From positions 62,001 through 126,000 of the IMG/VR virus record IMGVR_UViG_3300017917_001342: DNA of 64,000 bases. One strand, 5' to 3'. Of this stretch, positions 15,884 to 57,679 are shown in pieces. Made by a program: the position numbers and the translations under genes. The stretch's first letter is position 1, and every line of letters starts with the position of its first letter. The notes under the pieces were generated by a model. That model was not told the DNA's origin. It made no database searches and worked only from the letters and a program-made list of their open reading frames with translations.

Positions 15884-16201
15884 TCATCCTTGTTCTTTTT
15901 TAATCTGCTGTATACTATTTCTTATAGTATCAATTTCTGGCCAGGCTACACCTAATTCGCTAACTTGCCACGCTAATGCATCTGCTAGATAGAAAGCTTC
16001 TCGTTTAAAGTATGTTAAAATCATACGTATAATTTGCGTTTTATGTGGATCTAACAGTTCTGCATGGTTACCTCGATAACCAATATCTAACAGTTCTAAC
16101 AGAGCAACCCTCACGCCACCCATGTTATCATCGTCAAGAAATTCTTTGAGATATTTCAAATGATTCTTTGGATTGCGTTCTTCAGTGAGTTTGTATGTCA
16201 T
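15884..16201 (-). CDS. Small protein consisting mostly of the WPE module
   Basis: KTQIIRMIL...AWPEIDTIRNSI; ATGA overlap start. Confidence 0.7.
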   Translation of the reverse strand: MTYKLTEERNPKNHLKYLKEFLDDDNMGGVRVALLELLDIGYRGNHAELLDPHKTQIIRMILTYFKREAFYLADALAWQVSELGVAWPEIDTIRNSIQQIKKEQG

Positions 16202-18567: not shown

Positions 18568-18570
18568 AAC

Positions 18571-21317: not shown

Positions 21318-22811
21318 TCAAGCGTTGGTAAAAACTTTTATGCCGTATTCTTTTTCAAACGCCGCAGCATCGGCTTCGTCATTTACTATAGGTTGGCCTT
21401 TGATATTGAGACTGGTGTTTACCAGCATCGGGCAACCAGTTTCGCTATACCAACGCCGTAACAATTGATATAATCCCACATGCTGTTTGACATTTACCGT
21501 TTGTACTCTGCTTGTTCCGTCTACATGCACTATACCTGGAAAACGTTCTGGGTATTTACATTTAAGAGTGTATTGCATATAGCTAAGATCTTGTCCGTTG
21601 GTTTCAAAGTATTGATCAACATACTCTTCAAGAATCACCGGAGCAAAAGGTCTGAATGACTCGCGCTTTTTGACCACGTTGAGACGATCTTGAATATCTA
21701 CTATTCGCGGATCAGCTAACAGACTTCTATTACCCAATGCACGTGGTCCAAATTCTGCTCGACCGTTTGCTACACCTACAATGCCAGTTTGGTGTAGTTG
21801 ATGTATCACAGCACCAACTGGATACAGACCTTTGATATTGTGTCCTAGATAAGGGCCTTCCCATTTAACTGGTGTTTTTAAATAGGCCAATGCTGCACCT
21901 AGACTGTTTCCTGCATCACCAGGGTTTGGCATTATCCATATTTTATCCCATATGCCTTGTTGTGCAATAGCAGTGTTGGTTACGCAATTCAATGCACACC
22001 CTCCGCTTAATACAAGATTACTAGACTTTGCTGTAGCTTTTAGCCATTTACTGAGTTCCAGCATAATATCAGTAAACACTTCTTGTGCTGCTGCTGCAAG
22101 GTTTTCTACATCTGTTATTTCTGGATGCCAATTGATTATACCACGATGCATGTTAACTCGGCAACGGTAAAACGGCCATGTTGGTAAAACTTCTATCAAC
22201 TCATCTAAGATGAGATGTTTGTATTTCCATGAATAGCCGCATGCAGATAAACCCATCATAATGTATTCTTCTTCATTGGGTTTAAATCCGCAACGCTGTG
22301 TCATTGCAGTATAAAACAATCCTAGACTGTTTGGATATCTAGCACTAGCTATTTTTTTAAGGCTGTTACCCTGTCCTTTCCATGCAGTAGTAGTATCCCA
22401 TTCTCCGATTGCATCTATTACCAATATTGCAGCAGAATCGAATCCGCTTGTGTAATAACCACCTGCTGCATGACTGTGATGATGACTAACTGTGTGTACT
22501 GGTACATTGATAAAACCAATGTTGTTTAATAGTTTCTTAGGATTTGGCTCAAATACATCTCGCCACTGTCCTGCCCAGAGTTCTCTAGTGCGTTTTAAAA
22601 ACGGTTTTTCATGCCACACAATAACATTAGGATAACCAGCCGACCTGATTGATAATGCATCAATTAGCATTTGACGATTTATAGTATCGTCATTTTTAAT
22701 TTTACTGTAGCGTTCACTGTGACTGGCCCATTGTATTTTACCATTTTTAACAACGCTTACAGCAGCATCGTGACCGCCAGCGGAAAACCCCCAAACATTG
22801 ATATTTTGCAT
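21318..22811 (-). CDS. Carbamoyltransferase (NodU/CmcH family)
   Basis: HDAAV, ERYSKIK, HHHSHA, GGCALNC, GDAG, EFGPRALGNRS, FRPFAP, VHVDGTSR, NTSLN. Confidence 0.93.
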   Translation of the reverse strand: MQNINVWGFSAGGHDAAVSVVKNGKIQWASHSERYSKIKNDDTINRQMLIDALSIRSAGYPNVIVWHEKPFLKRTRELWAGQWRDVFEPNPKKLLNNIGFINVPVHTVSHHHSHAAGGYYTSGFDSAAILVIDAIGEWDTTTAWKGQGNSLKKIASARYPNSLGLFYTAMTQRCGFKPNEEEYIMMGLSACGYSWKYKHLILDELIEVLPTWPFYRCRVNMHRGIINWHPEITDVENLAAAAQEVFTDIMLELSKWLKATAKSSNLVLSGGCALNCVTNTAIAQQGIWDKIWIMPNPGDAGNSLGAALAYLKTPVKWEGPYLGHNIKGLYPVGAVIHQLHQTGIVGVANGRAEFGPRALGNRSLLADPRIVDIQDRLNVVKKRESFRPFAPVILEEYVDQYFETNGQDLSYMQYTLKCKYPERFPGIVHVDGTSRVQTVNVKQHVGLYQLLRRWYSETGCPMLVNTSLNIKGQPIVNDEADAAAFEKEYGIKVFTNA

Positions 22812-22862
22812 GCAATGTATCTCCAGTTACACTAGCTATATATTACAGTAATAGCAGCAGTT

Positions 22863-24098
22863 ATGACAATTTATATTCTTTATCACAACACTAGAAATAA
22901 CAGTGTACCGCAGTGGAATTACATACCAACTCCGGACCTAGCTAGAAGCTGTGATGATGTAGATGATCAATTTGATTTAACGTTAGTTGAATCTATGCCA
23001 AACACTGACATAGCCTATGCAAAAATAGAAGCTGTGCCGCAAGGTAGCAAATGGCTATATGCCATTAACAATCTCTACAGTAACGATGTCTATACACAAA
23101 ACGGGTTGGATGTGTTAGATCATTTTTGCTCGGATGAGAGACTTATGTCGGATTTACTATCGGGCCATGGTCGAATACTATTTGATGACAGACGAGAAGG
23201 GTACTTGTATGACAATTATATTGGTGGACAAATCAGTCAGTTCTTCTCTAATAGAAACATACCGTTGGATAAAGTTGTATTTGCTACGGGTACAGCCAAT
23301 GCCGAACAGATTTTCAATTATAGAAACTATGAGATTAAGCCATTTTATGTAAGACAGTTTGAGTTAGAAGCCAGTAAACTCTGCGACACTGTACCTTATC
23401 AGTCAAATAGATTACCTGTTAAACGTTTTTTATGTTTCAATCGCAGATATGCTTATCGACTACATAGATTACAATTTTTATCATTGATATATCAACACAA
23501 CCTATTACCACTGTTTTATTACAGTATGCTGGATGGTGTTGATCATGTAAGTGTAGTAGATGCTGCAAAAAGTCTAATAGGCAATGAACCACAGCATTTT
23601 AAAACCTATGAAACTATGTTAAAGTTACATGATAAAATGCCAATGTCGATAGATACAGATGACCTGCAAACAAATTTAGCAACTACACACTATTTGCCAA
23701 CTGTACAGGATTTTTACAATCAATCTGCAATCAGTGTAGTAGTAGAAACACTGTTTTATGACAGTGAAATATTTTTAAGTGAAAAAATTTGGCATCCTAT
23801 TAGAATGTCGCAGCCCTTTATTTTAGTTGGTGGTGCAGGATCTCTACAGCATCTGCGTGATTTAGGATACAAGACCTTTGATCATTGGTGGGACGAAAGC
23901 TACGATAACATCGCTGATCCATACGATAGAATGATGTCAATCGTGTCGATTATTAAACAGATATCAAATTGGTCTGAATTCCAACTGTCTTTATTTTTAA
24001 TAGAATCGGCAGAAATATGTAAACACAATTTCAATCATTTAATGTCTGCAAAACATAGAATATCGTATGATTCACAAATAACACAGTTATTTTTATAA
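22863..24098 (+). CDS. Putative glycosyltransferase-like protein (paralogue 2)
   Basis: FLCFNRR...HR, VVVET, SEKIWHP, LGYKTF..WWDESYD. Confidence 0.55.
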   Translation: MTIYILYHNTRNNSVPQWNYIPTPDLARSCDDVDDQFDLTLVESMPNTDIAYAKIEAVPQGSKWLYAINNLYSNDVYTQNGLDVLDHFCSDERLMSDLLSGHGRILFDDRREGYLYDNYIGGQISQFFSNRNIPLDKVVFATGTANAEQIFNYRNYEIKPFYVRQFELEASKLCDTVPYQSNRLPVKRFLCFNRRYAYRLHRLQFLSLIYQHNLLPLFYYSMLDGVDHVSVVDAAKSLIGNEPQHFKTYETMLKLHDKMPMSIDTDDLQTNLATTHYLPTVQDFYNQSAISVVVETLFYDSEIFLSEKIWHPIRMSQPFILVGGAGSLQHLRDLGYKTFDHWWDESYDNIADPYDRMMSIVSIIKQISNWSEFQLSLFLIESAEICKHNFNHLMSAKHRISYDSQITQLFL

Positions 24099-24995
24099 AT
24101 TGAAATTTGTCTTTATATATGGAATTAGATATTCACTTGCAAAATGTTCGTGTGAATATCTAGATGGATGGCCTAACAATGCTCTACCATAGACATTGTT
24201 TTCTTTTGCGTGCAATAGAGAATGATTCATAGTATATGCAAATGTGTTGGCATTAAAAAAGTCTTGCAAATCTTTTACTATACTTGGATAGTATATGTTG
24301 TCTCCAATTTTTTGTATAGCTCGTTCTATAGTGTCGTCTAAAACCCAATCATCTAACAGTTTACGGTTCAGTTCAGGATTTTCTCTGTATATGTTTACAG
24401 GGTCAATGATAATATGAGGCACATCCTTAAGGATCTGTTTTATTGCAATGATGTGATTTTTTACATGCAGGTATTTGGTCAGCACATCATCACCATACAT
24501 ATCAGACAACTCTATATACTGTTTGTGCAATTTACTTTTGTTATGTGGTGCATAATTGTTATGCGTTCTAATCTTGTCGTGCCCTGTTTGTTCATTTAAT
24601 TTTGTAGTCCTATATGGAAAAGTAAGACCTACTATAACCAATGTGTCTGACGATATGTCATTTTTATGTAATATAAGTTCTGACATTATTGCATCGTTAC
24701 TGTATCCAGCCCACGCATAATTTTTGTAACTACTAAATTTAAAATGCCTTGAAATAATACCAGATATGCAGTAGCTATGGCAACGTTCTTCATAGTCTGC
24801 TGTTTGCATCTCAATGTCCCATAGTGCGTCAAAATGTGAACCTTTTAAAAGTTCAACTGGCACTGCACCAGAAATTTTATCTCTAGGTAAATCTTTAACT
24901 ATATGTTCTATTCTATGTTTTAAATCAGCATCGTCTTGTGGTAATTCAGTGCCGTACATATAACTGTCGCCAAATGTCAATAGCTTAGTAATCAT
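24093..24995 (-). CDS. SGNH/GDSL-like hypothetical protein
   Basis: FGDSYMYG, N.A..G.SN, GHPS...H. Confidence 0.55.
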   Translation of the reverse strand: MITKLLTFGDSYMYGTELPQDDADLKHRIEHIVKDLPRDKISGAVPVELLKGSHFDALWDIEMQTADYEERCHSYCISGIISRHFKFSSYKNYAWAGYSNDAIMSELILHKNDISSDTLVIVGLTFPYRTTKLNEQTGHDKIRTHNNYAPHNKSKLHKQYIELSDMYGDDVLTKYLHVKNHIIAIKQILKDVPHIIIDPVNIYRENPELNRKLLDDWVLDDTIERAIQKIGDNIYYPSIVKDLQDFFNANTFAYTMNHSLLHAKENNVYGRALLGHPSRYSHEHFASEYLIPYIKTNFNL

Positions 24996-26115
24996 TTAGA
25001 AACTCTTTTAATTTTGGAAATGTTGCAGTGTAATCGGTTTTTCTAATGCTATCTAACGCAGTCAGATAATCTTTCATTTTACGTGCAAGCTGTTCGCTGT
25101 CGTCTGCTGTATCATATTGCATTATAGTGTCAAGTGTTACGCCGTTGAATTTAACACCTGTACAATCAATTGCAGACAGATATTCGTGTAATTGGTCTTT
25201 TGGTAATATATTAAATTTCAAAAAATCTGGCGATACTAATAGATTCAAATGTAAAAACAAATCATGGTCTTTAGAAAATTTTACAGCATCACCGATATTA
25301 AAAACGCTCATTGCATTTACTGTGTAAGTTAATGACAATGATACACTAGACGGTTTGTTACGAATTACATATTGCAAATTATCCATTACAGAATCGAAAT
25401 TTGCAGGGAATCGCTGGTATTCAAATTCTTCTTTAACTAAACTGTCTATACTCCAATTTAAACCTACATACTTAAATTTAGAATACGTATCTAATAATTC
25501 GTCTGTGATTTTAACTGTTCCGTTAGTATTAGTTCTTATCTTTTGATTTTTGCTTGTGCCAATATCAACGCAAAAGTTTAATATATCGTAATGATATTTG
25601 ATTAATAACGGTTCGCCGCCGTAGAATTCTAATAGTTCTACTTCCTGTATATAGGGTTTAATAGTGTTGAATACATCGACATTGTGTATCCATTTATATT
25701 TTGATGTATTGAATTTATAGCCATTCAATTTTTCAAAATCTGAATACCACATACTACTATTACCGGGAGCACACATAACACACTTTAAATTACAAACGTT
25801 GTTAAATTTAATGTCTAAACTGCGAGGTGTTGATTTTACTAATAGTCCTCGATCATCTTGTTCAAACAAACGCTTACTGTAGCCATTGTTGGCTTCTACT
25901 TCCCAGCAGTGATTACAACTTGGTATATTATAGCTGTCAACATCATTTGCATGACGTATACGGTCAGTTGAATTCCATACAGATTCTGGGGTATCTGTTG
26001 CAATATTATATTCGGTGCCGTCATCTTTTACATAGACATGTGTACTGAGACAGCAAGGCGCAAATGTGCCATCATTTCGTATTTCTAAATTAGTATGAGG
26101 CATGATGCAGCGCAT
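24985..26115 (-). CDS. Radical SAM protein with N-terminal Cys-rich (twitch-like) domain
   Basis: CNLKCVMC, GGEP; N-terminal C..P...PCC...CNHC. Confidence 0.9.
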   Translation of the reverse strand: MRCIMPHTNLEIRNDGTFAPCCLSTHVYVKDDGTEYNIATDTPESVWNSTDRIRHANDVDSYNIPSCNHCWEVEANNGYSKRLFEQDDRGLLVKSTPRSLDIKFNNVCNLKCVMCAPGNSSMWYSDFEKLNGYKFNTSKYKWIHNVDVFNTIKPYIQEVELLEFYGGEPLLIKYHYDILNFCVDIGTSKNQKIRTNTNGTVKITDELLDTYSKFKYVGLNWSIDSLVKEEFEYQRFPANFDSVMDNLQYVIRNKPSSVSLSLTYTVNAMSVFNIGDAVKFSKDHDLFLHLNLLVSPDFLKFNILPKDQLHEYLSAIDCTGVKFNGVTLDTIMQYDTADDSEQLARKMKDYLTALDSIRKTDYTATFPKLKEFLNDY

Positions 26116-27587: not shown

Positions 27588-27590
27588 ATG

Positions 27591-28841
27591 TCATATTACT
27601 TTTTTATAGTGATCAATCAGTTCAGGGAATGTATCAGCAAAACTTTCGGATCTAATCCTATCTAGTGAATCTGTCATAAAAATAAATTTGTCATGTATTT
27701 CTTTTAGTTCTTCTGCACTTCTATCTTTACCAGTGTACATATAAGAAATTATTCCGTCGTAATAGAATTTTAGTTTTTCACGAGTTTCGACACAGTCAAA
27801 TGTATTTAAATGATTAGAAAACTTTTCTTTTACCCTAGCTTTGTAATCGTCATTTAGTGTATTGATATGATACCATTTTGGATCGGTTAATACATTACCA
27901 AGATGCATATTATGTATTTTCATCCCGCAGGAGAATAGATAGTCTAAAAAGTCTGGCAAATGTAAGATATTAAACACCTGTATAGTCGGACTAACATTAA
28001 ATTGTACGTTTGGACTTTTTATCAACAGATGAATGTTTTTATCAATTACATTCCACTTGGTACCTTTTCTAATGTATTCTGCACGACTGCCCATGCCATC
28101 TAGACTTGCCATTACCTGCACTAAATGAAAATTCTTCCATAGATCTACATTGTTCCAATGCTTGTATTTGATTTTCAATAGATTGGTGTTATAACGCAGC
28201 TTGACGTCGAATCGTTTCTTCTCTATTAACTTTTCAAGTATGTAATAGTGTTCGTCCATTATCAGCGGTTCGCCACCGGCAAAATAGATTTCTTCTACAT
28301 TGTCTATCTGATCGTCTAGAATTTTATACATGTCTTCGATACTGTGGTCTTTGGTATTGACTACAGGGACTTTTTCACTTGTTGCACCGTATAGTTCTTT
28401 TTCGTCGTTGAACCACAAACTGCTGAGATGACCACCGCACATTCTGCATTTCATGTTACAGAGGTTGCTAAATCTAAAATCCCAGTATCGCAGTTTCATT
28501 TCATCCAATGAACCATCTGGATTGGTCTTTTTAACAGACTCTTCTATATGATGTTCAAATGTCCAGTTGGCATTGTGCCTAAAACTAACAATGTCATTGT
28601 CTTCTTGTTCGAAACATTTAGTGCAGAGTTTTGGCTTTTCACCATTTAGAAACTGCAATCGTAGATTTTTCATGTGTTCGCTATTCCATAGTTCGAATAG
28701 CGTATTGTCTTTGAGATTGCCGATTGATGATTTGTAATTTGTAATACAGCATTGATAAACATTGCCATTTGGCCAAGTGTTTAAATGTATCCACGGTATA
28801 ATACAAAATGTCGGTGTTGGTATTTTATCAGTTTTGTTCAT
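27591..28841 (-). CDS. Radical SAM protein (twitch-like N-terminus)
   Basis: FCIIPW...QCC...CTKC; CNMKCRMC; GGEP. Confidence 0.9.
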   Translation of the reverse strand: MNKTDKIPTPTFCIIPWIHLNTWPNGNVYQCCITNYKSSIGNLKDNTLFELWNSEHMKNLRLQFLNGEKPKLCTKCFEQEDNDIVSFRHNANWTFEHHIEESVKKTNPDGSLDEMKLRYWDFRFSNLCNMKCRMCGGHLSSLWFNDEKELYGATSEKVPVVNTKDHSIEDMYKILDDQIDNVEEIYFAGGEPLIMDEHYYILEKLIEKKRFDVKLRYNTNLLKIKYKHWNNVDLWKNFHLVQVMASLDGMGSRAEYIRKGTKWNVIDKNIHLLIKSPNVQFNVSPTIQVFNILHLPDFLDYLFSCGMKIHNMHLGNVLTDPKWYHINTLNDDYKARVKEKFSNHLNTFDCVETREKLKFYYDGIISYMYTGKDRSAEELKEIHDKFIFMTDSLDRIRSESFADTFPELIDHYKKVI

Positions 28842-32766: not shown

Positions 32767-32804
32767 CAGTAAAACTCCGTTTCAACATTGTACTAGTTGT
32801 TGTA

Positions 32805-32915
32805 TTATTTGTATATAAACGGATCGCGTTTTCTAAGTTCTGCTAACCTTTTTTTGAGTTTCTTCTTATCCAAGTACCATTTAACTAGTCGTAGCTTTTT
32901 GAACCAATTTAACAT
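32805..32915 (-). CDS. Small basic peptide (36 aa, MLNWFKKLRLVKWYLDKKKLKKRLAELRKRDPFIYK)
   Basis: Manual translation; GGAG RBS; overlaps the upstream stop; below the ORF-track length cut-off. Confidence 0.65.
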   Translation of the reverse strand: MLNWFKKLRLVKWYLDKKKLKKRLAELRKRDPFIYK

Positions 32916-34180
32916 GTTGTGTCTCCGTTGTAAATTTTCATAAACTGTGAATATGCAGGTGTTTTAAACCAGTTTCTACTTAAAAACCATTGTTGGTTGT
33001 GCATACATATTTCTTTTACCTGTTCTAACCAACTCCATTTATCTCGTACAAACGATAAATTTTGCAAGTTACTTAATATAATAGCAACCCTATCTGCAAA
33101 TGGCGCAGTGTCATAACTTTCGTCGAATACAGAGTCAAATGTTTCAAACCCCCAGGACTTTAATTTTGCAAGTGTACCTTGATGACCTAATACCATGAAT
33201 GGTTGTTGCGCCCACAGGGGTTTCCATAGTTTTTCGCTAATGAACAAGTTGTAAGGCTCATCAAATGCATGAGTTTCTGTAATAACACTTGCCCAGCTTT
33301 TTAAATAAATGCTGCGATTAATTTGCATTGCTTTGTTATTGTTAAAATCAGAATCATCTATTACAAGCGGCAATACAGTTTTAGCTTTATCAACTACTTC
33401 TTGTGGTACACCATGTGCAGTCCAATTGTCGTAAACCAATGTGTTATGGCTTATCATCCCTTTTAAATGAAGGTCGTGTTCTATTAAACGCATTACCATA
33501 ACTTCTCTGTGATGGCGGCTTACTCTGTTTAGACAATTAAACAGTTTGACATTGTAGTTGTTTGATTTTGAAACTTTATGATCGTTCCATTCTACTGCGT
33601 TGCTTCTACGTAAATTCAATTGTTGCATATACATTAAATGTGGAAACCCTATTATGCTTATGCGATCATTGATTTTATGAATATCACACCATTGTTTATA
33701 ACCATCAGCATCTAATTCGTTACCAGTTAGAAACAAAAAACTTTTTGGCGGAATATGGTGTTCTGCACACAGCTTATGAAAATATTCATACAGTTTTGTA
33801 TCGTAGAATCCTTCGTTAAGGTTGTCAACTACTAATAGTGCTTTACCAGTCTTGGCATCATCTAACACGGCCGATGGTATGAAATTGACAAATGGTTCGT
33901 AACCATAGCTGTTACCGGGCCAACCAGTCCAGTAGTCTGCATCATTCCATGTGCCTATATTATACGCATATCTATCTGGTCTATTTTCCACACCGCTGTG
34001 GCACCAATTGTGATTATCTCGATTCCACCAATTTAATCGCCAATAGTGAAACATATTAGCAACGGGAAATCTACCAGACGACAACTCCCATCTTGGCCCG
34101 TGAGTTGTGTGCGGACATGCAGTCATTGTTCTGAATCTTTTTGGGTCATCAAAAACCCAATGTACATTGTCGGTGTTCAT
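32909..34180 (-). CDS. Putative glycosyltransferase-like protein (paralogue 3)
   Basis: FNCLNR...HR, VITET, ISEKLWKP, GFETFDSVFDESYD. Confidence 0.55.
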   Translation of the reverse strand: MNTDNVHWVFDDPKRFRTMTACPHTTHGPRWELSSGRFPVANMFHYWRLNWWNRDNHNWCHSGVENRPDRYAYNIGTWNDADYWTGWPGNSYGYEPFVNFIPSAVLDDAKTGKALLVVDNLNEGFYDTKLYEYFHKLCAEHHIPPKSFLFLTGNELDADGYKQWCDIHKINDRISIIGFPHLMYMQQLNLRRSNAVEWNDHKVSKSNNYNVKLFNCLNRVSRHHREVMVMRLIEHDLHLKGMISHNTLVYDNWTAHGVPQEVVDKAKTVLPLVIDDSDFNNNKAMQINRSIYLKSWASVITETHAFDEPYNLFISEKLWKPLWAQQPFMVLGHQGTLAKLKSWGFETFDSVFDESYDTAPFADRVAIILSNLQNLSFVRDKWSWLEQVKEICMHNQQWFLSRNWFKTPAYSQFMKIYNGDTTC

Positions 34181-35412
34181 GGTTTCAGCTTTGCCAAACG
34201 TGGTAGGTAATCTTGTATGTTGCGGTTCTTTAGTTTATCAACCTGTTCAACATCATACCAAAATTGGGCCCAAGAATCAGTTGGCCAGTTGTCAAATTCA
34301 TACTCTGCTCCCTGTGTAGCAGGACTGTCCATATAATTTAATGCACCTACCCAACTGTTGTAGTTTTGGTATTGTTCTAAACCTGCTATTGCAGCTTCAA
34401 CGTCTCTGCGTATTTCGTTTTTAGCATGCTGCGGCAACAATCTTACATCTTGATATGTAGGATGATAGACTAGATTTACAAATGGTAACGATGAAAAATA
34501 CGGCTGTTGAATTGTCCAGTTGATCAGTTCAGCAACATTGTAACAGTTGTACAACCCAAATGTTGTATGCAGTTCTAATTTTATGTTAGGTGCATCTAAT
34601 GCAGCAATGCGTATAAGGTTGCTGTAAATTGTGTTCCAGTCGCTGTTTTGGCGTATGTAGTCATTTGCTTCACCAATGGCTTCTATGCTGACATTTATGT
34701 TAACATGTGCAAATGATTGCCACATGTTCAGCAGTTCCTGTGGAAGAGTAGTGAGATTGGTGTTGTAGCTTATCTGCTGTTTGTTTGATAATTTTTGATC
34801 TATACACTCTCGCAGAATATCCATATGTTGTTTAACAATAAGTGGCTCGCCGCCAAGGAAGTTCATGTGTGTTACATGCTTCAAACTGTTTTTGATTACA
34901 GAGATTGCATGTGGATCTTCGAACCACAGTTGTCTTACACTGCGAGGATCTGCATTGATAGTTTTCCATCTGTCTAGTTTGCTAAGATCGTGCATCCATA
35001 GATGACTGTTCATCCAGTTGCACATTCTACAGACTAGATTGCACTTGTTACCAAATGTAATATCCAAGTATTCTATTGTTGCATCAGACAACAATGTACC
35101 ATCGGTATCTATGCTACCTGGTACACTGTTTTTGTATACGTCATTCCATATCTGTCGAAAACTTGTACCACCGCTGTCTTCTATCTTCCAACACTTGCTG
35201 CATGTTGGATGTCTTTGGCCTTTTGCTATAGCAAGTCTAACTTCTTTATGTAATTTGCTGTTTAAAACGTCAAGCGGTTCGTTGCTTTCTGTGATAAAAG
35301 GTTGACTGTAATCTTCCCAATGTCCGTGATTATTACAACACAGCCTCGGTCGTCCAGGGCCATCTAAACTAAGACTGTTGTAAGGCAATATGCAAAACGC
35401 ATCATTGGTCAT
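34177..35412 (-). CDS. Radical SAM protein (twitch-like N-terminus)
   Basis: FCILP...LCC...CSKC; CNLVCRMC; GGEP; start reassigned to the ATGA overlap. Confidence 0.9.
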   Translation of the reverse strand: MTNDAFCILPYNSLSLDGPGRPRLCCNNHGHWEDYSQPFITESNEPLDVLNSKLHKEVRLAIAKGQRHPTCSKCWKIEDSGGTSFRQIWNDVYKNSVPGSIDTDGTLLSDATIEYLDITFGNKCNLVCRMCNWMNSHLWMHDLSKLDRWKTINADPRSVRQLWFEDPHAISVIKNSLKHVTHMNFLGGEPLIVKQHMDILRECIDQKLSNKQQISYNTNLTTLPQELLNMWQSFAHVNINVSIEAIGEANDYIRQNSDWNTIYSNLIRIAALDAPNIKLELHTTFGLYNCYNVAELINWTIQQPYFSSLPFVNLVYHPTYQDVRLLPQHAKNEIRRDVEAAIAGLEQYQNYNSWVGALNYMDSPATQGAEYEFDNWPTDSWAQFWYDVEQVDKLKNRNIQDYLPRLAKLKP

Positions 35413-36395
35413 GTCATACGCCTTTTGGTAATACTCATGTCTGTGCCACAGTGACAATGTGTTCTGGGACAGACAATTGTACCAGATCTGTTGCTTAGAT
35501 TTAAATGTGAGTCGTTGATATTACCTATAACACCAGAAACACCGCAACTGCCTAGCGTTATATCGCCATTGATTGCGATGTTTATGCTTGTGCCTATATC
35601 ACAGTGCCAGTCTAAGAAAAAGTTACGGCGTTCAGCAGTTAGTCTATTGCTGTTAACTGGTTGTGTTGTACCATCATCGTATCGTTCTATTACCATGCTG
35701 TGTCCAACACGATTATCTGGCTTTGGAAGAGATTGTTTAGATCTATTGCTATTTTGCATTAACCATTCGATCTTGCTTTTGTCTTTGTAATCATAGGGAT
35801 CTGCGTTAACACTCATTTCGTCTAGTATCGGTACATACTCCATAGTGACATTTTGCATTGCTGCCCATATAACATCTGCTTTGTCAAGCATTTGATCCCA
35901 ATGGTCCTCAGCCATCATCATTCTCACAGCAAGATAATTTACTTTGTCCTGAAGAAACACAGCATTTTCTAAGAACCGATCATGCTTTACCCATCCAGGA
36001 TGATAGCTTGCAACCACATCGTCAAATAAATGATAGTTGTGTTCCCACCAGTGCAATGGTCTAGACAGGTTAGTGTTGATTGCAACAGTTACTTTGCCTG
36101 GCAGTAGAGCCGAAACATAGTTGCAAACGTCTACTAGTATTGGCCAATGTGTGGGTTCACCTCCACTTAAAAATAGTTTTACTTTGTCATAGTGTTGACC
36201 TGTAAATCCGTTTAACAGTTTGTCCAGGTTACGCTTATATACTTCTATATTTAGATTTGGTATATCCCCGCCCCAGTTACCAGGGTTGCAATAGCCGCAG
36301 CGGAAATTGCAGGTATTACTGGTTTGCCAAGTTATGTTTAGCGTTTTACCGTTTAAGGCTTCTATAGCAATTAGGTTTTTATTGTCTAGCAGCAT
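35409..36395 (-). CDS. Radical SAM protein with C-terminal Cys-rich (SPASM-like) domain
   Basis: CNFRCGYC, GGEP; C-terminal C...C...CPRTHCHC. Confidence 0.9.
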   Translation of the reverse strand: MLLDNKNLIAIEALNGKTLNITWQTSNTCNFRCGYCNPGNWGGDIPNLNIEVYKRNLDKLLNGFTGQHYDKVKLFLSGGEPTHWPILVDVCNYVSALLPGKVTVAINTNLSRPLHWWEHNYHLFDDVVASYHPGWVKHDRFLENAVFLQDKVNYLAVRMMMAEDHWDQMLDKADVIWAAMQNVTMEYVPILDEMSVNADPYDYKDKSKIEWLMQNSNRSKQSLPKPDNRVGHSMVIERYDDGTTQPVNSNRLTAERRNFFLDWHCDIGTSINIAINGDITLGSCGVSGVIGNINDSHLNLSNRSGTIVCPRTHCHCGTDMSITKRRMT

Positions 36396-37638
36396 TTTGT
36401 AACTGATCTATTAAGTTTGGCCATATAACAGTATGATCTAAATTACGTAATTTGTCATTAACTAATAGCCAATCAACTAGTCTTGATTGCAGTTCAGTAT
36501 TGGTTGGATTTTTAAGCATCGCAGTTTTCATGTAGTCTACACCGTCGTGAAAATTACACAGCGTTCCACGTGGTATAGGTCTCAGTGTATTACGTAGTTT
36601 TTTCATTGCATCCTGACGCAGTTCAATTGGAATAACATCTACGCTGAGATATTGTGGATAGTCTAATATGATAGGATACCAAATTATGTTTTTAACGTAG
36701 TCTTCGGCAAGATAAACAAGCCATTGAATCAATGAATCTATACGATCGTAGTTTAATGCATTTACAACAGTATAGACCTTTAATGTTTTAGCTACATTAT
36801 GTTTTAGATACTGTGTAAAATTATGTGTTTTAGTTTGCCATTTAGTTGGATATCTGATATATTCGTCAACTTCATTTAAACCATCTATACTTATCTGTAT
36901 TTCAGTGTTGCTAAATTGTGCAAGACGATGTAGCAGTTTGTAATTCCAAACAGTGCAATTGGTAGTGAAACTAACGTGGCAAGAGTCATTGCCAGCATCT
37001 AACAGCATATCCAAGTATTGATAGATATTTGTGTCCATAGTTGGCTCACCACCAGTTATGTACAAACGCTTCAATGTTGGTGCTAGTTTTTTAAAGTTTT
37101 CTTTGCTAGATTCGTCCACAATATAGTTTGTGTTGACAAACTCAGTGCTGAGTTCGTTACGCCATGCATCTAACAACCATTGTGGTAACTCAGCAGACGC
37201 TACAGCTTCTGCTCGTTCTTCTGCAATTTTACTGCTGCTGCCACTCCAACAACCAACACATTTCAAGTTACAAGTTGTGCTTAGTCTCAAATCAAAACTG
37301 TTTGGTAACACTGTTGCCACAGTGCTTAGATCTAACATTTGGTCTATGTTATAGTCTCGATTAGCATGTGTTCTCGGACTGGGATTGCCTGCAGATTCAA
37401 TATCGTAACAGATTTTACAGTCATCTACAGGTTCACTATTGAGCATACGTCTACGCACATTTTGCATGTATGTGCCATTCCAGATGTCTTCAATCGGCTG
37501 CTTATTCCACAATACAGGTTTGTTATCGGCATCTTTGATCACAATGTTGTCGCTGATATTGCAACAGAGTTTGCATTGCCCTTGCGGTGTAGTATTGATG
37601 TTATGCCATGCTAATGCGCACAAGCTATTAGATTGCAT
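36379..37638 (-). CDS. Radical SAM protein (twitch-like N-terminus)
   Basis: LCALAW...LCC...CKIC; CNLKCVGC; GGEP. Confidence 0.9.
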   Translation of the reverse strand: MQSNSLCALAWHNINTTPQGQCKLCCNISDNIVIKDADNKPVLWNKQPIEDIWNGTYMQNVRRRMLNSEPVDDCKICYDIESAGNPSPRTHANRDYNIDQMLDLSTVATVLPNSFDLRLSTTCNLKCVGCWSGSSSKIAEERAEAVASAELPQWLLDAWRNELSTEFVNTNYIVDESSKENFKKLAPTLKRLYITGGEPTMDTNIYQYLDMLLDAGNDSCHVSFTTNCTVWNYKLLHRLAQFSNTEIQISIDGLNEVDEYIRYPTKWQTKTHNFTQYLKHNVAKTLKVYTVVNALNYDRIDSLIQWLVYLAEDYVKNIIWYPIILDYPQYLSVDVIPIELRQDAMKKLRNTLRPIPRGTLCNFHDGVDYMKTAMLKNPTNTELQSRLVDWLLVNDKLRNLDHTVIWPNLIDQLQNAARQ

Positions 37639-38836
37639 GATCTATACCTCTGAGTTCAGGAAACACATCTCTCCAACTTTCTTTGCGTATCTTGTCTAGT
37701 TTTGCAGTTTGGTGTGCCCATAATGGTAATAGGTCACTGTCATCGCTTTCATTCATAAATGAAACAATACCTTTAAATGCAGATACTGTATTGGAATTTG
37801 CATGGTTTTCTGTTAGCCATTCACAGTGTTTTTCAATTTTATCTGTAATTCGTTGTTTTATAGAAACAGGCAAAATTCTAGTACTGAAGTATTTTGGACT
37901 GGTTAGTTGATTAATTCTAATATTGTCAATATCCACATAGTCGTGCTGTACCCAGTCTTTGTGAAAGTCAGATAAGTGTTTGGCATTCCACATGCTTACG
38001 GTAGGTGTTATTTCAAAATACGCATTGGGCAATTCCTGCATCATGCGTTTTCTATTATTAACAACGTCTTTCCAAATCATGTTTTTACGAATGTATTCGC
38101 CGCGGTCGCCCATACCATCTAAACTAGCTGCGACTCGCAAATTTGGAAACTGTCTCCACAACTCAAAGAGATTACGTTGCTTGTAATCTAACTTTGTAAA
38201 ATTTGTAGTGTAGTTCAATTGTACGTCTGTTTTACCTATGCTTATCCAATAGTCTAATATGCGATAATGTTCATCTGTCATTAGACTTTCGCCGCCTGCA
38301 AAGTACACTTCTTCGGTATTTTGCAAATGCGGTAACAGTTGTTCCCAAAAATCGCCTGATTGATTTATGTTTAAAATTCTAGGCGATTTATAACTTGCAT
38401 CCATCATTAGTGAATCATCATACCAACTGCTGCTCAATTGTGGTCCGCAGGTTCTACAACGCAAATTGCATATGTTACTAAAACGAACATCCAGATAAAC
38501 CAAATTGACTTTTTCAACTGTGCCGTCCATTTGAGTAGTGTTTACTAAATTGCTGTGATGTGCATAGGCTTCGTTGGCATGATTTCTCAGGGTAAATGTG
38601 CCGTGCCGCTCAACATCGTAACATCTACTGCATGCAGGAGTTTCTTTACCTTCTAACATATTTTTACGCAGCTCTCGCATGCGTTCGCTGTTCCAAATTT
38701 CGTTTAAACGCTGTTGGTTGGTATTGCCAACAGTCCAATTGGTATCACTCATACAGCAGGGAAACACATCACCATTTGGCCACATATGCATGTGTACCCA
38801 TGGCATCATGCAAAATACTTTATTGTCGGGTATCAT
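37628..38836 (-). CDS. Radical SAM protein (twitch-like N-terminus)
   Basis: FCMMPW...PCC...CSRC; CNLRCRTC; GGES. Confidence 0.9.
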   Translation of the reverse strand: MIPDNKVFCMMPWVHMHMWPNGDVFPCCMSDTNWTVGNTNQQRLNEIWNSERMRELRKNMLEGKETPACSRCYDVERHGTFTLRNHANEAYAHHSNLVNTTQMDGTVEKVNLVYLDVRFSNICNLRCRTCGPQLSSSWYDDSLMMDASYKSPRILNINQSGDFWEQLLPHLQNTEEVYFAGGESLMTDEHYRILDYWISIGKTDVQLNYTTNFTKLDYKQRNLFELWRQFPNLRVAASLDGMGDRGEYIRKNMIWKDVVNNRKRMMQELPNAYFEITPTVSMWNAKHLSDFHKDWVQHDYVDIDNIRINQLTSPKYFSTRILPVSIKQRITDKIEKHCEWLTENHANSNTVSAFKGIVSFMNESDDSDLLPLWAHQTAKLDKIRKESWRDVFPELRGIDHAI

Positions 38837-40212
38837 ATCAATTTTCCGCATTCGTTATAGAACTCAATTAGTTCTGGGAATGTCTTTACAAAATCAGTGG
38901 CCCTACGACGGTCGTGTTCGTTGAACCATGCGTAAAAGTCTCTGCGTCCTGTATACAATTTATCATTGTCGTAGTGTGTGGTTTCCATGTAGTGTACAAC
39001 ACGCCTAAACTTGTCTACTTCTAAACTACCAAAGAGATTCTTATCTAAATCATCTTCGTTTACTTCCATAAACTCTAGACATTCTTTGAGATAAGGTAGA
39101 AACTGTTCTTTTGGCAATAGATTTATGTCATACTGCAATGGTTCTCTTAGATACGGTGTGTCGAATCGCACGTTGCGCATAGTGCGTCTTTCACCAGATG
39201 GCTTTGGTGCAAAACGTTTACGCCATTCCAACATTTTGATCAACAGCAATTTAAAGTTGGGAACACTGAGTATGTTATAGGTCATCATCATACTAACTGA
39301 TTGTCCACTCAGTGTCATGTAAGTATCTAGGTTTTTCTCCCATTGACCAAGATCAAGCCCGGTTCGTATGTACTCGGCCTGCGGTCCCCAAGTGTCAATA
39401 CTGGTGAACAGTGTAAAATCTTTAATACACTTGTTGTCTATAAGTTCTCGTATCTTAGTAGCAAGGCGGTTGACAAGTATCGGCTTAACGCCTAAGTTGC
39501 TGTTTATGTTAAGTTCCAGTTTTGGCATAGGGTTAGCAGCGAGGTCGTCAAGCAATGTCCAGGTACTTTTATGTAGCAGTGGTTCGCCGCCAGTTATGCG
39601 CAGTATGTTTACACTGTCTCGCACAGTTGGCCACCATCGCCACCACGCATCTACAAATGGGTTATCAGCTTCTTCATAGATTTTTAACCAATCTATATCA
39701 CATTTGTGATTCACAACCATGTCATACGGACCGTGATCGCGTATTTCATTATAGAATTTGCTAGATGCTTTGGGATGGCAGTATCCGCATTTGAAATTGC
39801 ATTCATTGCCGAAACTGACTTCTATGTATTCTGGCGCTACTGGAAAATCTGCACCCTTGGCTTTGATTTCATCATATCGGTCTTGTCTAAAAATACTGCT
39901 GTTACGTATATGTCTATCGCTTATTAAATCTCTGTTGAGATTTTCAATGTTCCAGCAGTATTGGCATCCACTAGGCTGTCGACCATTTAACAATGCTCGT
40001 CGTTCTGCTTTTTTGTGTTCAGTATTGTGTAATGCACTGGGATCCCAACCTATACGCTTTTCGTCTATCTTATGCGGAGCAGGATGATAACAGCTATGTG
40101 TTTCACCAGTTTGAAGATATATAGTTGTATGATGCCATTTAGCCATACAAAATGTAGGACTAATAGCATCCATCAACGGTCTGAGTTCATCTATTTTTTT
40201 ACGATCTACCAT
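38833..40212 (-). CDS. Radical SAM protein (CHHP subtype, here CYHP)
   Basis: FCMAKW...SCYHP...CQYC; CNFKCGYC; GGEP. Confidence 0.9.
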   Translation of the reverse strand: MVDRKKIDELRPLMDAISPTFCMAKWHHTTIYLQTGETHSCYHPAPHKIDEKRIGWDPSALHNTEHKKAERRALLNGRQPSGCQYCWNIENLNRDLISDRHIRNSSIFRQDRYDEIKAKGADFPVAPEYIEVSFGNECNFKCGYCHPKASSKFYNEIRDHGPYDMVVNHKCDIDWLKIYEEADNPFVDAWWRWWPTVRDSVNILRITGGEPLLHKSTWTLLDDLAANPMPKLELNINSNLGVKPILVNRLATKIRELIDNKCIKDFTLFTSIDTWGPQAEYIRTGLDLGQWEKNLDTYMTLSGQSVSMMMTYNILSVPNFKLLLIKMLEWRKRFAPKPSGERRTMRNVRFDTPYLREPLQYDINLLPKEQFLPYLKECLEFMEVNEDDLDKNLFGSLEVDKFRRVVHYMETTHYDNDKLYTGRRDFYAWFNEHDRRRATDFVKTFPELIEFYNECGKLI

Positions 40213-40499: not shown

Positions 40500-40574
40500 T
40501 TTACTTGACAGTACCGTAAAGGTATGTTAATGTGTCTTCGGCTATATCTCTCACCAACAATGGAGCAACGTTAC

Positions 40575-42033: not shown

Positions 42034-42062
42034 AAAAAAGCCCTGCATTGCAGGGCTTTTTT
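42034..42062. terminator. Bidirectional intrinsic terminator
   Basis: AAAAAAGCCCTGCA-T-TGCAGGGCTTTTTT between the convergent rpoD and sod genes. Confidence 0.85.
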
Positions 42063-52415: not shown

Positions 52416-54845
<2,430 letters not shown>

Positions 54846-57674: not shown

Positions 57675-57679
57675 AAACT

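What the first reader, a model, noticed from the sequence alone, without database searches (positions are those of the whole stretch)
21318..40212. 19-kb phage biosynthetic island with ten radical-SAM genes
Seen in sequence: ten CxxxCxxC radical-SAM ORFs. Five have an N-terminal C..CC..CxxC twitch-like domain, three have a C..C(H/Y)HP..CxxC variant, one has a C-terminal SPASM-like domain and one has a B12-binding domain. Most are translationally coupled and interleaved with a NodU/CmcH carbamoyltransferase, a UDP-glucose dehydrogenase-family enzyme, two GT-like paralogues and an SGNH-like protein. Related GT-like, GT2, methyltransferase and SGNH genes lie at 16198, 19168, 43284, 54884, 55556 and 59130. 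Established: twitch/SPASM radical-SAM enzymes act as sugar dehydrogenases/epimerases or peptide maturases. Inference: the island is an uncharacterised pathway making a heavily modified glycan for the virion (the Thr-rich collagen fibres are candidate acceptors), the DNA or the host surface. The phage FdxA could supply electrons.
Basis: partly seen in the sequence, partly recalled or inferred. Interest (0 to 1): 0.8.

Follow-up and report, generated by a model that had tools for sequence, protein, structure and literature searches.

The report
Phage sugar-tailoring island, ten radical-SAM genes
A 518-kb phage carries a real 19-kb block of ten radical-SAM enzyme genes mixed with sugar-handling genes; it joins two gene cassettes that recur in many aquatic phages, most likely builds an unusual modified sugar, and holds an overlooked 36-residue gene.

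Summary
Window 21318-40212 carries ten CxxxCxxC radical-SAM (rSAM) ORFs. Eight belong to NCBIfam NF033640 (N-terminal twitch rSAM, 266-411 bits against a cutoff of 170). One is a B12-type (class B) rSAM and one is STM4011-like. With them sit a NodU/CmcH carbamoyltransferase, an NDP-sugar dehydrogenase, two virus-only GT-B-fold paralogues and a weakly SGNH-like protein.

The window comes from a 518,643-bp IMG/VR phage contig. The island joins two cassettes that occur separately in dozens of phage contigs. Each of the eight twitch paralogues falls in its own position-specific orthologue clade, and the seven genes comparable with relative L011 are under purifying selection.

Cellular homologues lie in polysaccharide loci. 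Phage relatives are flanked by GT7 transferases, a DegT aminotransferase, heptose genes and UGDH. No island protein has a membrane segment.

Best reading (about 0.5): a cytoplasmic sugar/glycan tailoring pathway. The acceptor is unproven. The Thr-rich collagen-like fibre is a candidate.

New here: an unannotated 36-aa ORF (32805-32915) ending in KRDPFIYK. It belongs to a phage micro-protein family whose stop usually overlaps the carbamoyltransferase start (ATGA).

The function is still uncharacterised. rSAM-rich marine phages have been noted in the literature before.

The parts
38833..40212 (-). rS8: N-terminal-twitch radical SAM, C(Y)HP subtype; first gene of the array
   Evidence: NF033640 302.7 bits; alignment A2; groups with L011, L012 and L006 orthologues
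37628..38851 (-). rS7: N-terminal-twitch radical SAM, CC subtype
   Evidence: NF033640 406.7 bits; Pfam SPASM at residues 14-78, 59.7 bits; AF2 model pLDDT 92; 1916 homologues
36379..37638 (-). rS6: N-terminal-twitch radical SAM, CC subtype
   Evidence: NF033640 280.7 bits; cassette-A orthologue clade
35409..36395 (-). rS328: short radical SAM without the N-terminal twitch, with a Cys-rich C-terminus; STM4011-like
   Evidence: Pfam rSAM 28.5 bits; NF038073 48 bits, below cutoff; a 325-330-aa orthologue holds the same slot in cassette A
34177..35457 (-). rS5: N-terminal-twitch radical SAM, CC subtype (TTG start uncertain)
   Evidence: NF033640 312.8 bits; cassette-A last-position clade
32909..34180 (-). 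GTl_B: virus-only GT-B-fold protein, putative glycosyltransferase
   Evidence: AF2 model plus Foldseek: top hits are GT-B glycosyltransferases, probability 0.97-1.0, TM 0.3-0.4; Atlas neighbours fused to NDP-sugar epimerase/dehydratase; invariant E316, K317 and P327
32805..32915 (-). Unannotated 36-aa ORF ending ...LRKRDPFIYK; its ATG overlaps the GTl_B stop
   Evidence: amino-acid-invariant tail with free synonymous codon change; 337 cluster representatives; the stop overlaps the carbamoyltransferase start (ATGA) in 56 of 89 instances elsewhere
31594..32766 (-). NDP-sugar (UDP-Glc/GDP-Man family) dehydrogenase
   Evidence: Pfam PF03721 68.2 bits and PF00984 61.9 bits; TIGR03026 145 bits, below cutoff; 407-bit match to the HTVC008M UDP-glucose dehydrogenase
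30173..31594 (-). rS4: N-terminal-twitch radical SAM, CHHP subtype
   Evidence: NF033640 335.9 bits; branches at the base of the group holding the rS8 clade and the cassette-B position-1 clade
28828..30183 (-). rS3: N-terminal-twitch radical SAM, CHHP subtype
   Evidence: NF033640 298.4 bits; cassette-B position-2 clade; 383-bit orthologue RsoM2USA_202
27591..28841 (-). rS2: N-terminal-twitch radical SAM, CC subtype
   Evidence: NF033640 411.4 bits; Pfam SPASM at residues 13-76, 45.1 bits
26115..27587 (-). B12-binding-type (class B) radical SAM, putative C-methyltransferase
   Evidence: Pfam rSAM 59.8 bits; B12-binding 25.6 bits, below cutoff; NCBIfam PhpK/BchE/RiPP C-methyltransferase models at E 1e-17 to 1e-24
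24985..26115 (-). rS1: N-terminal-twitch radical SAM, CC subtype
   Evidence: NF033640 266.5 bits
24093..24995 (-). SGNH/DUF6071-like protein (weak); last gene of the minus-strand array
   Evidence: N-terminal GDS block and C-terminal HP..HE stretch shared with DUF6071/GDSL proteins; no Pfam hit
22863..24098 (+). GTl_A: paralogue of GTl_B (24% identity); the only plus-strand gene
   Evidence: Alignment A1; phmmer map
21318..22811 (-). NodU/CmcH/TobZ-type carbamoyltransferase
   Evidence: Pfam Carbam_trans_N 134.8 bits and Carbam_trans_C 176.1 bits; 50% identical to RsoM2USA_199
16198..17463 (-). Satellite: third GT-like paralogue
   Evidence: BLASTP E 2e-07 to GTl_B over the conserved C-terminal block
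48333..48677 (+). Satellite: ferredoxin FdxA, candidate reductant for the rSAM clusters
   Evidence: NF045490 158.9 bits against cutoff 135
55556..56278 (+). Satellite: DUF6071 (GDSL/SGNH-like), the family that recurs in both cassette types
   Evidence: Pfam PF19547 36.4 bits; phmmer links
52416..54845 (-). Candidate acceptor: collagen-like tail fibre with G-X-Thr repeats
   Evidence: PHROG tail-fibre families; 46 GXY triplets, with Thr at Y in 28

Best explanation
The island is a soluble, cytoplasmic carbohydrate-tailoring pathway.

Inferred mechanism:
- A nucleotide sugar is oxidised by the UGDH-family enzyme.
- The GT-B-fold proteins transfer sugars.
- The eight twitch rSAMs each abstract a hydrogen atom from a specific sugar C-H bond. 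This would drive oxidation, epimerisation, dehydration or C-C chemistry. Each enzyme carries one auxiliary 4-Cys cluster.
- The class-B rSAM C-methylates.
- The SGNH/DUF6071 proteins add or remove O-acyl groups.
- The NodU/TobZ-type enzyme O-carbamoylates a free hydroxyl.
- The phage FdxA re-reduces the Fe-S clusters.

The island arose by joining two modules that circulate separately among aquatic phages.

Shown here: gene identities, family membership, modular origin, purifying selection on the seven genes testable against L011, absence of membrane segments, and association with sugar genes.

Inferred only: every chemical step and the acceptor. My preferred acceptor is a virion protein made in the cytoplasm, such as the G-X-Thr collagen-like fibre.
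For: 1. Identities.
2. GT-B fold of the unnamed paralogues. Their structural neighbours in other viruses include proteins carrying NAD-epimerase/GDP-mannose-dehydratase or methyltransferase domains.
3. Cellular N-Twi rSAM homologues lie in polysaccharide loci:
   - L007 (Crocinitomicaceae): GT2, UGDH, NAD-epimerase, GT4, GDSL and a Wzt ABC transporter.
   - L009: Wzx flippase and an AsnB-like amidotransferase.
   - L008: GDSL, UbiA and PhyH.
4. Phage relatives:
   - L012 cassette flanked by two GT7 transferases and a DegT aminotransferase fusion.
   - HTVC008M: GT, methyltransferase, carbamoyltransferase, UGDH and a 2OG oxygenase in a row.
   - S-CAM1: carbamoyltransferase next to heptose genes, between tail-fibre genes.
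   - Pelagimyophage rSAM cassettes lie in the host-recognition cluster (PMC7029224).
5. Non-redundancy: each paralogue falls in its own position-specific orthologue clade, and pN/pS against L011 is 0.11-0.28 with saturated dS.
6. No membrane segment in any island protein. This fits cytoplasmic action.
7. A fibre with 28 of 46 G-X-Thr triplets lies 12 kb away, and FdxA is present.
Against: - No enzyme of the N_Twi_rSAM family has a known reaction. I found none in the library.
- The rS7 model matches solved rSAM enzymes only through the generic core (TM 0.3-0.47). These include both peptide-acting and nucleotide-acting enzymes.
- The window's island encodes no NDP-sugar pyrophosphorylase, 4,6-dehydratase or aminotransferase.
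- The GT assignment is at fold level only. There is no Pfam or PDB sequence match.
- The peptide-carbamoyltransferase pair mostly occurs without any sugar gene, and often between replication genes.
- Guilt by association is weak in the mosaic regions of phage genomes.
Confidence: 0.5

Rival explanations
1. The chemistry is the same, but the target is the host cell surface. The island would remodel LPS O-antigen or capsule precursors during infection, for example to block superinfection or change receptor display, using the host's own export machinery.
For: Cellular homologues sit in O-antigen or capsule-type loci with Wzt or Wzx exporters. Cyanophage and pelagiphage carbamoyltransferase clusters are annotated with LPS-type heptose and sugar genes.
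Against: The island has no membrane protein, initiating transferase, flippase or polymerase. Relatives place such cassettes beside tail-fibre genes (PMC7029224).
Confidence: 0.18
2. The pathway acts on a peptide or protein. The conserved KRDPFIYK micro-protein, or a virion protein, would be the substrate or scaffold. It would be carbamoylated by the NodU/HypF-related enzyme and radical-modified by the C(H/Y)HP-type rSAMs, as in PQQ, mycofactocin or scaffold-peptide pathways.
For: - The ORF is translated and strongly constrained.
- It is tightly coupled to the carbamoyltransferase: ATGA overlap in 56 of 89 instances.
- Every viral locus with a C(H/Y)HP-type rSAM also has the ORF, wherever the contig reaches its expected position.
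- The carbamoyltransferase is distantly related to HypF. HypF carbamoylates the C-terminus of HypE (my own knowledge).
- SPASM/twitch enzymes are often peptide maturases. CteB and anSME are among the top structural hits.
Against: - Cassette-A-only phages have five or six of these rSAMs and no such ORF within 10 kb.
- The bacterial loci lack it.
- No PqqD/RRE, peptidase or exporter family was hit in the island.
- The peptide-carbamoyltransferase pair usually stands without any rSAM.
Confidence: 0.12
3. The island makes a free, diffusible glycoside of the aminoglycoside or nucleoside-antibiotic type, or a nucleotide analogue of the viperin type, used against competitors or host defences.
For: The enzyme set resembles aminoglycoside clusters (my own knowledge): TobZ-type carbamoyltransferase, BtrN-type twitch rSAM, GenK-type class-B rSAM and GT-B transferases. 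BlsE, DesII, viperin and MoaA are among the structural hits. Weak prokaryotic-viperin hits appear.
Against: There is no cyclitol synthase, aminotransferase, resistance gene or exporter in the window's island. The viperin scores are far below cutoff. The cellular context is polysaccharide loci, not antibiotic clusters.
Confidence: 0.1
4. The island hypermodifies nucleic acid. It would glycosylate or carbamoylate phage DNA bases, or modify tRNA, to evade restriction.
For: In the largest lineage the peptide-carbamoyltransferase pair sits between Toprim-like and DnaB-like replication genes. Two precedents rest on my own knowledge: GT-B is the fold of T4 DNA glucosyltransferases, and rSAMs take part in some phage base modifications.
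Against: No hydroxymethylase, base-exchange enzyme or kinase was seen in the island. Cellular homologues lie in polysaccharide loci. The rest of the 518-kb genome was not examined.
Confidence: 0.07

Closest known systems
NCBIfam NF033640, 'twitch domain-containing radical SAM protein' (N_Twi_rSAM)
   Same: Eight island proteins score 266-411 bits against a cutoff of 170 over the full model length. They share four N-terminal Cys, CxxxCxxC and GGE.
   Different: No member has a described reaction, so the family is a name rather than a function. In ESM Atlas the nearest clusters are 91-100% viral. The island holds eight deep paralogues (21-38% identity) of two subtypes: CC and C(H/Y)HP.
rSAM-rich T4-like marine phages: the EVG with 12 rSAM genes (PMC5332604) and rSAM cassettes in the pelagimyophage host-recognition cluster (PMC7029224)
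   Same: The phenomenon is the same. Cassette A here (GT-like, rS7-like, rS7, optional B12 rSAM, rS6, rS328, rS5, DUF6071) recurs in about 20 fetched contigs.
   Different: Those papers only noted the genes. This island fuses cassette A with cassette B (C(H/Y)HP rSAMs plus carbamoyltransferase) and a UGDH gene, in a 518-kb phage.
Sugar-acting twitch or auxiliary-cluster rSAMs: BtrN, BlsE, DesII; class-B methylases such as GenK
   Same: They share the rSAM core and one auxiliary cluster. BlsE and DesII are among the best structural matches. The gene neighbourhood is sugar-related.
   Different: Here the twitch domain is N-terminal rather than C-terminal. Sequence identity is about 15% and TM is at most 0.47. 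No substrate-binding residues could be compared.
'Nol-like' carbamoyltransferase sugar clusters of cyanophages and Pelagibacter phage HTVC008M; Ralstonia jumbo phage RsoM2USA
   Same: The carbamoyltransferase is 28-50% identical. HTVC008M also pairs it with UGDH and a GT. RsoM2USA has a mini-cassette of C(H/Y)HP rSAM, DUF6071, micro-ORF, DUF6071 and carbamoyltransferase.
   Different: Near their carbamoyltransferase genes these phages have no twitch rSAM (S-CAM1, HTVC008M) or one (RsoM2USA). All the RsoM2USA genes are annotated hypothetical, and its micro-ORF is unannotated.
Peptide-derived cofactor pathways (PQQ, mycofactocin) and HypF-HypE carbamoylation
   Same: A short conserved peptide with an invariant C-terminal aromatic motif sits next to SPASM/twitch rSAMs, a GT and a HypF-related carbamoyltransferase.
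   Different: No PqqD/RRE partner or peptidase is present. The peptide is absent from cassette-A phages. It travels mainly with the carbamoyltransferase alone.
Glycosylated collagen-like G-X-Thr fibres (Bacillus BclA; giant-virus fibrils) and glycosylated phage virions
   Same: The 809-aa fibre has 46 GXY triplets, with Thr at Y in 28.
   Different: Nothing links the fibre to the island apart from lying 12 kb away. The comparison rests on my own knowledge.

Membership tests
Radical SAM superfamily (PF04055) | CxxxCxxC cluster motif | tested here: met
   Present in all ten ORFs.
Radical SAM superfamily (PF04055) | GGE SAM-binding motif | tested here: met
   G186, G187 and E188 are invariant in the eight twitch paralogues. 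Not checked in the B12-type rSAM (26115-27587) or in rS328 (35409-36395).
Radical SAM superfamily (PF04055) | Pfam score at or above the gathering threshold (29.5 bits) | tested here: inconclusive
   Six of ten are above it (34.0-59.8 bits). Four are just below (22.8-28.5 bits). Three of those four pass NF033640.
NF033640 N_Twi_rSAM | Full-length match above the curated 170-bit cutoff | tested here: met
   Eight proteins score 266.5-411.4 bits and cover model positions about 1-398.
SPASM domain rSAM (two auxiliary clusters, C-terminal 7-Cys motif) | Seven-Cys motif binding two auxiliary clusters, located C-terminal to the rSAM core | tested here: not met
   Only four Cys are invariant, and they lie N-terminal to the core. 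The Pfam SPASM hits fall at residues 3-78. The arrangement is therefore twitch-like.
Class B (cobalamin-dependent) rSAM methyltransferases | N-terminal B12-binding Rossmann domain plus rSAM core | tested here: inconclusive
   26115-27587: PF02310 scores 25.6 bits against a 32.1 cutoff, and rSAM scores 59.8 bits. PhpK, BchE and RiPP C-methyltransferase models align across residues 79-392 but far below their cutoffs.
NodU/CmcH/TobZ O-carbamoyltransferases | Kae1-like N-terminal domain and YrdC-like C-terminal domain | tested here: met
   PF02543 134.8 bits and PF16861 176.1 bits. The NodU equivalog model is not met (142.6 against 1000), so the protein is a family member and not NodU itself.
UDP-glucose/GDP-mannose dehydrogenase family | NAD-binding N-terminal domain, central domain and C-terminal UDP-binding domain | tested here: inconclusive
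   The N-terminal and central domains are above cutoff. The C-terminal domain was not detected. TIGR03026 scores 145 against 189.8. There is a strong match to the HTVC008M UGDH.
GT-B glycosyltransferases (GT10-like?) | Two Rossmann-like domains | tested here: met
   The best Foldseek matches are GT-B enzymes, probability 0.97-1.0 for the top ten PDB hits, but TM is only 0.3-0.4 and the N-terminal 100 residues are unmodelled.
GT-B glycosyltransferases (GT10-like?) | Nucleotide-sugar binding | not testable with these tools
   Needs a binding or activity assay.
GT-B glycosyltransferases (GT10-like?) | Sequence membership of a CAZy/Pfam GT family | tested here: not met
   No Pfam, NCBIfam or PDB sequence hit. 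GT10 appears only as the nearest named Atlas cluster, at 0.80, which is lead level.
RiPP or peptide-derived cofactor gene cluster | Precursor peptide | tested here: inconclusive
   A conserved small ORF exists, but it is absent from cassette-A-only loci.
RiPP or peptide-derived cofactor gene cluster | RRE/PqqD-like recognition domain, peptidase or exporter | tested here: not met
   No PqqD/RRE, peptidase or transporter family was hit in the island.
Self-contained surface polysaccharide locus (Wzx/Wzy or ABC type) | Membrane initiating transferase, flippase or ABC exporter, and polymerase | tested here: not met
   No island protein has a hydrophobic 19-mer above Kyte-Doolittle 1.7. No such Pfam families were found.

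The most novel reading that the evidence does not exclude
The 36-aa KRDPFIYK micro-protein is the scaffold or substrate of a new phage pathway. The carbamoyltransferase would O-carbamoylate its near-terminal Tyr, or build on its C-terminus. In islands like this one, the C(H/Y)HP-type twitch rSAMs, GT-like and SGNH-like enzymes would elaborate it into a glycosylated, radical-modified peptide or peptide-derived small molecule. That would be a phage-encoded analogue of the PQQ, mycofactocin or scaffold-peptide pathways.
Probability: 0.1. Interest if true: 0.9.

Novelty: new variant of a known kind. Interest (0 to 1): 0.68.

Why it matters
The N-terminal-twitch rSAM family is large: 1916 hits in one search, and dozens of almost purely viral clusters in ESM Atlas. 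It has no known reaction. This island packs eight distinct orthologue types of it, plus a class-B and an STM4011-like rSAM, into essentially one operon with sugar enzymes. That makes it a compact test bed for new radical carbohydrate chemistry.

If the product decorates virion fibres or the host surface, it bears on host recognition and on the hypervariable 'host recognition clusters' of abundant marine phages.

The conserved micro-ORF coupled to the widespread phage 'Nol-like' carbamoyltransferase gives a concrete handle on an auxiliary gene that has been listed in cyanophage and pelagiphage genomes for years without a function. The cultured Ralstonia phage RsoM2USA carries a minimal version, so the question can be tested at the bench.

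Tried and rejected
- Megablast of the island against INPHARED phages: no match. tblastn gave only about 20% identical hits in Vibrio and Ralstonia jumbo phages.
- tblastn of rS7 against PLSDB plasmids: nothing.
- tblastn of the micro-ORF against phages: nothing. The query is short and lysine- and arginine-rich, and the low-complexity filter was on. It was found instead by a local HMM and by a pattern scan of IMG/VR.
- HMM of the GT-like family against PDB sequences: only chance hits.
- Pfam and NCBIfam for the micro-ORF, the GT-like proteins and the SGNH-like protein: no family.
- Literature searches found nothing on function. Queries covered N-terminal twitch rSAM, rSAM with O-antigen, rSAM with polysaccharide epimerase, and the DPFIY motif.
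- The promoter and terminator scans are uninformative: 66 promoter-like sites against 76.7 expected, and 14 terminator-like sites against 12.2 expected.
- Rfam: only tRNAs. There is no SAM or B12 riboswitch.
- The fold search of rS7 gave only generic rSAM-core matches and cannot separate sugar substrates from peptide substrates. AFDB clusters gave unnamed homologues.
- 'Recent in-situ duplication' of the rSAM genes is rejected. The paralogues are 21-38% identical, and each has its own orthologue clade.
- 'Decaying paralogues' is rejected for the seven A-half genes shared with L011. The B half could not be tested, because the closest relative diverges after the UGDH gene.
It was rerun without that row.

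Full report
**What is there**

Between 21318 and 40212 the window carries 15 ORFs of 300 aa or more. Thirteen form a head-to-tail minus-strand array from 40212 down to 24093, and ten of its twelve junctions overlap. After that come a plus-strand gene (22863-24098) and a minus-strand carbamoyltransferase (21318-22811). These two are separated by only 51 bp.

Ten ORFs have CxxxCxxC. The only other matches to that motif in the window fall in frames of 70 aa or less.

Pfam and NCBIfam assign the genes as follows.
- Eight are NF033640 'twitch domain-containing radical SAM protein', at 266-411 bits against a cutoff of 170.
- One is a B12-binding-type rSAM. Its rSAM domain scores 59.8 bits. Its B12 domain scores 25.6 bits, below the cutoff, but class-B models align across both domains.
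- One is a 328-aa STM4011-like rSAM, below its cutoff.
- One is a NodU/CmcH carbamoyltransferase with both domains above cutoff.
- One is a UDP-Glc/GDP-Man dehydrogenase family member.

The eight twitch paralogues share four invariant N-terminal Cys, the rSAM triad and GGE. Five are 'CC' type and three are 'C(H/Y)HP' type. Among 141 relatives the same two classes hold, 107 against 30.

**Where it comes from**

The window matches IMGVR_UViG_3300017917_001342, a 518,643-bp viral contig, at 100% identity across the two gene queries used. Phage hallmarks in the window include:
- a T4-type RNA ligase and an ATP-dependent DNA ligase;
- a collagen-like tail fibre;
- an endolysin and a holin-like protein;
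- 11 tRNAs and a GIY-YIG endonuclease.

No sequenced phage isolate is close at the DNA level.

**Modular origin**

I mapped island proteins onto 30 related IMG/VR loci and 5 metagenome loci. Two recurring cassettes emerged.
- Cassette A runs GT-like, rS7-like, rS7, optional 718-aa B12 rSAM, rS6, rS328, rS5. Two DUF6071/GDSL-like genes follow. It occurs in about 20 contigs, some next to a DNA ligase.
- Cassette B runs optional GT-like, rS4, rS3, rS7-like, rS1/2-like, optional GT-like, rS2-like. Then come DUF6071 paralogues, a micro-ORF and the carbamoyltransferase. It occurs in contigs of 23-374 kb.

The window's island is an A-like half (40212->32909), then UGDH, then a B-like half (31594->21318). 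The closest relative, L011 (about 80% amino-acid identity), shares the A half plus UGDH and then diverges.

A maximum-likelihood tree puts each window paralogue in its own clade, or at the base of one. Those clades are made of genes holding the same cassette position in other phages. Against L011, the seven shared genes have pN 0.09-0.22 and pS 0.71-0.83, which is saturated. The paralogues are therefore old and non-redundant, and the seven that could be tested are under purifying selection.

**The unnamed genes**

GTl_B was modelled with 26 homologues. Mean pLDDT was 68.7, and the core from residue 100 to 420 was good. The best matches in PDB and Swiss-Prot are GT-B glycosyltransferases: glycogen synthase, MshA, BshA, WaaG/RfaK, MurG and FucT. 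Probability is 0.97-1.0 among the top hits, and TM is 0.3-0.4, as expected for two-domain enzymes.

In ESM Atlas all 100 nearest feature hits lack any common Pfam family, and the nearest clusters listed are 100% viral. Its structural neighbours include clusters of 705-aa and 571-aa viral proteins. The first carry NAD-epimerase/GDP-mannose-dehydratase domains and the second carry methyltransferase domains. The nearest named family is GT10, at lead level only.

A third paralogue lies at 16198-17463.

The 300-aa protein (24093-24995) shares only a GDS block and a C-terminal HP..HE stretch with DUF6071/GDSL proteins. DUF6071-like paralogues are a constant of both cassette types and of phage RsoM2USA.

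**Context that bears on function**

Cellular homologues of the twitch rSAM:
- L007, a Crocinitomicaceae contig of 585 kb. The gene lies in an O-antigen-like locus with GT2, UGDH, NAD-epimerase, GT4, GDSL, HTTM, PhyH and a Wzt ABC transporter.
- L009, a Bacteriovoracales MAG. The gene lies beside a Wzx-type flippase and an AsnB-like amidotransferase.
- L008, a Bacteroidota MAG. The gene lies with GDSL, UbiA and two PhyH genes.
- L006, a Bacteriovoracaceae MAG. A five-rSAM cassette lies among housekeeping genes.

Phage relatives:
- L012 is flanked by two GT7 transferases and a DegT-aminotransferase fusion.
- Pelagibacter phage HTVC008M has GT, methyltransferase, carbamoyltransferase, an NAD-synthetase-like gene, UGDH and a 2OG oxygenase in a row.
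- Synechococcus phage S-CAM1 has the carbamoyltransferase next to heptose genes, between tail-fibre genes.

Two papers have already noted the phenomenon. One reports rSAM cassettes in the pelagimyophage host-recognition cluster (PMC7029224). The other reports a T4-like environmental genome with 12 rSAM genes (PMC5332604). Neither proposes a function.

No island protein has a membrane segment. FdxA is encoded at 48333-48677. The 809-aa fibre has 46 GXY triplets, with Thr at Y in 28.

**The overlooked micro-ORF**

The 142-bp 'gap' between GTl_B and UGDH holds a 36-codon ORF (32805-32915, minus strand). Its ATG overlaps the GTl_B stop, and a GGAG lies 8 nt upstream. It ends in ...LRKRDPFIYK.

Distribution:
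- It is present in every cassette-B locus whose contig reaches the expected position, and in L011 and L012.
- It is present but unannotated in Ralstonia phage RsoM2USA, between RsoM2USA_201 and RsoM2USA_200.
- It is absent from cassette-A-only loci and from the bacterial loci.
- A pattern scan of IMG/VR hit more than 600 stretches, of which 213 were confirmed.

Linkage and constraint:
- In 56 of 89 instances the carbamoyltransferase ATG overlaps the micro-ORF stop (AAATGA).
- Across 70 distinct DNA tails the last ten residues are nearly invariant, while Leu, Arg, Pro, Ile, Asp and Phe codons vary freely. The ORF is therefore translated and constrained at the protein level.
- A profile search of 1.84 billion representatives found 337 clusters. 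Almost all listed members are 30-76 aa with the motif at the C-terminus, and no listed hit is longer than 156 aa, so there is no fusion to a carbamoyltransferase-sized protein.
- No Pfam or NCBIfam family matches it, and the motif gave no literature hit.

In the largest lineage the pair sits between Toprim-like and DnaB-like genes and has no other island homologue within 10 kb. The micro-protein therefore belongs with the carbamoyltransferase. It could be a substrate, a subunit or a coupling leader. It cannot be the general substrate of the twitch rSAMs.

**Structure of a twitch rSAM**

rS7 models confidently (pLDDT 92.3). The best solved matches are CteB, BlsE, GDGT-MAS, PFL-AE, anSME, MoaA, viperins, DesII and EpeE, at TM 0.3-0.47. 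That is the generic rSAM core, so this result cannot decide the substrate class.

**Verdict**

The most likely function is a cytoplasmic sugar/glycan tailoring pathway (about 0.5). The steps are listed under 'best explanation'. All chemistry and the acceptor are inferred.

Rivals, in order:
- host-surface glycan remodelling (0.18);
- peptide or protein modification centred on the micro-protein (0.12);
- a free glycoside or nucleotide analogue (0.10);
- nucleic-acid hypermodification (0.07).

The island is a new variant of a known kind. Phage sugar-modification clusters and rSAM cassettes have been seen before. This one combines both cassette types, at ten rSAM genes, against at most eight in any of the loci fetched through the rS7 gene. 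The enzyme family and the micro-protein remain uncharacterised.

Noticed in passing
window 32805-32915 (-); also L121 13020-13142 (Ralstonia phage RsoM2USA) and L042-L120: An unannotated, translated 33-40-aa ORF family ends in KRDPFIY(K/R). Its stop usually overlaps the start of the phage NodU-like carbamoyltransferase (AAATGA). It has 337 cluster representatives in the large protein library and no Pfam or NCBIfam model.
   Followed up: yes
L042-L120 (e.g. L097 8926-9975, L090 11572-13140): In the largest lineage that carries the micro-ORF/carbamoyltransferase pair, the pair sits between a Toprim-like gene and a DnaB-like helicase. A ResIII/DEAD helicase lies upstream, and no sugar or rSAM gene lies within 10 kb.
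   Followed up: partly
window 17460-19146 (-): A ferredoxin-dependent bilin reductase (PF05996), a heme oxygenase (PF01126) and a RyR-domain protein lie in a row. This is a pigment-type auxiliary gene set typical of cyanophage-like marine phages.
   Followed up: no
window 40524-42029 (+) and 42061-42618 (-): A full-length RpoD-like sigma-70 factor (regions 1.2, 2, 3, 4; 448 bits to PRK05658, below its cutoff) is transcribed divergently from the island. A Fe/Mn superoxide dismutase gene follows it.
   Followed up: no
window 57598-63903 (+): An array of 11 tRNA genes (ARAGORN), interrupted by a GIY-YIG/NUMOD3 homing-endonuclease-like gene at 60842-61378. Rfam adds a weak extra tRNA call at 57680-57751.
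   Followed up: no
L006 8689-14714 (Bacteriovoracaceae MAG, 118-kb contig): A five-gene rSAM cassette (two rS7-like, rS328-like, rS6-like, rS8-like) lies between PrkA/pseudouridine-synthase genes and a HAD phosphatase gene in a predatory-bacterium MAG. It has no GT-like gene and no micro-ORF. This could reflect exchange between phage and cell, or a binning artefact.
   Followed up: partly
L011 17230-19562: The closest relative (about 80% amino-acid identity) replaces the window's B half, after UGDH, with two STM4011-like rSAM genes (357 and 419 aa). This puts a module boundary at the UGDH gene.
   Followed up: partly
L001 844-3331 and 20343-20816 (281-kb scaffold): A jumbo-phage scaffold carrying cassette A also encodes uroporphyrinogen decarboxylase, coproporphyrinogen oxidase, porphobilinogen deaminase, a CCA/poly(A) polymerase and a PTPS (QueD-like) gene.
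   Followed up: no
window 48674-52414 (-): A 1246-aa Thr/Gly/Asn/Ser-rich protein lies directly downstream of the collagen-like fibre gene on the minus strand. It has no PHROG hit and no GXY runs, and is probably a second fibre component.
   Followed up: no
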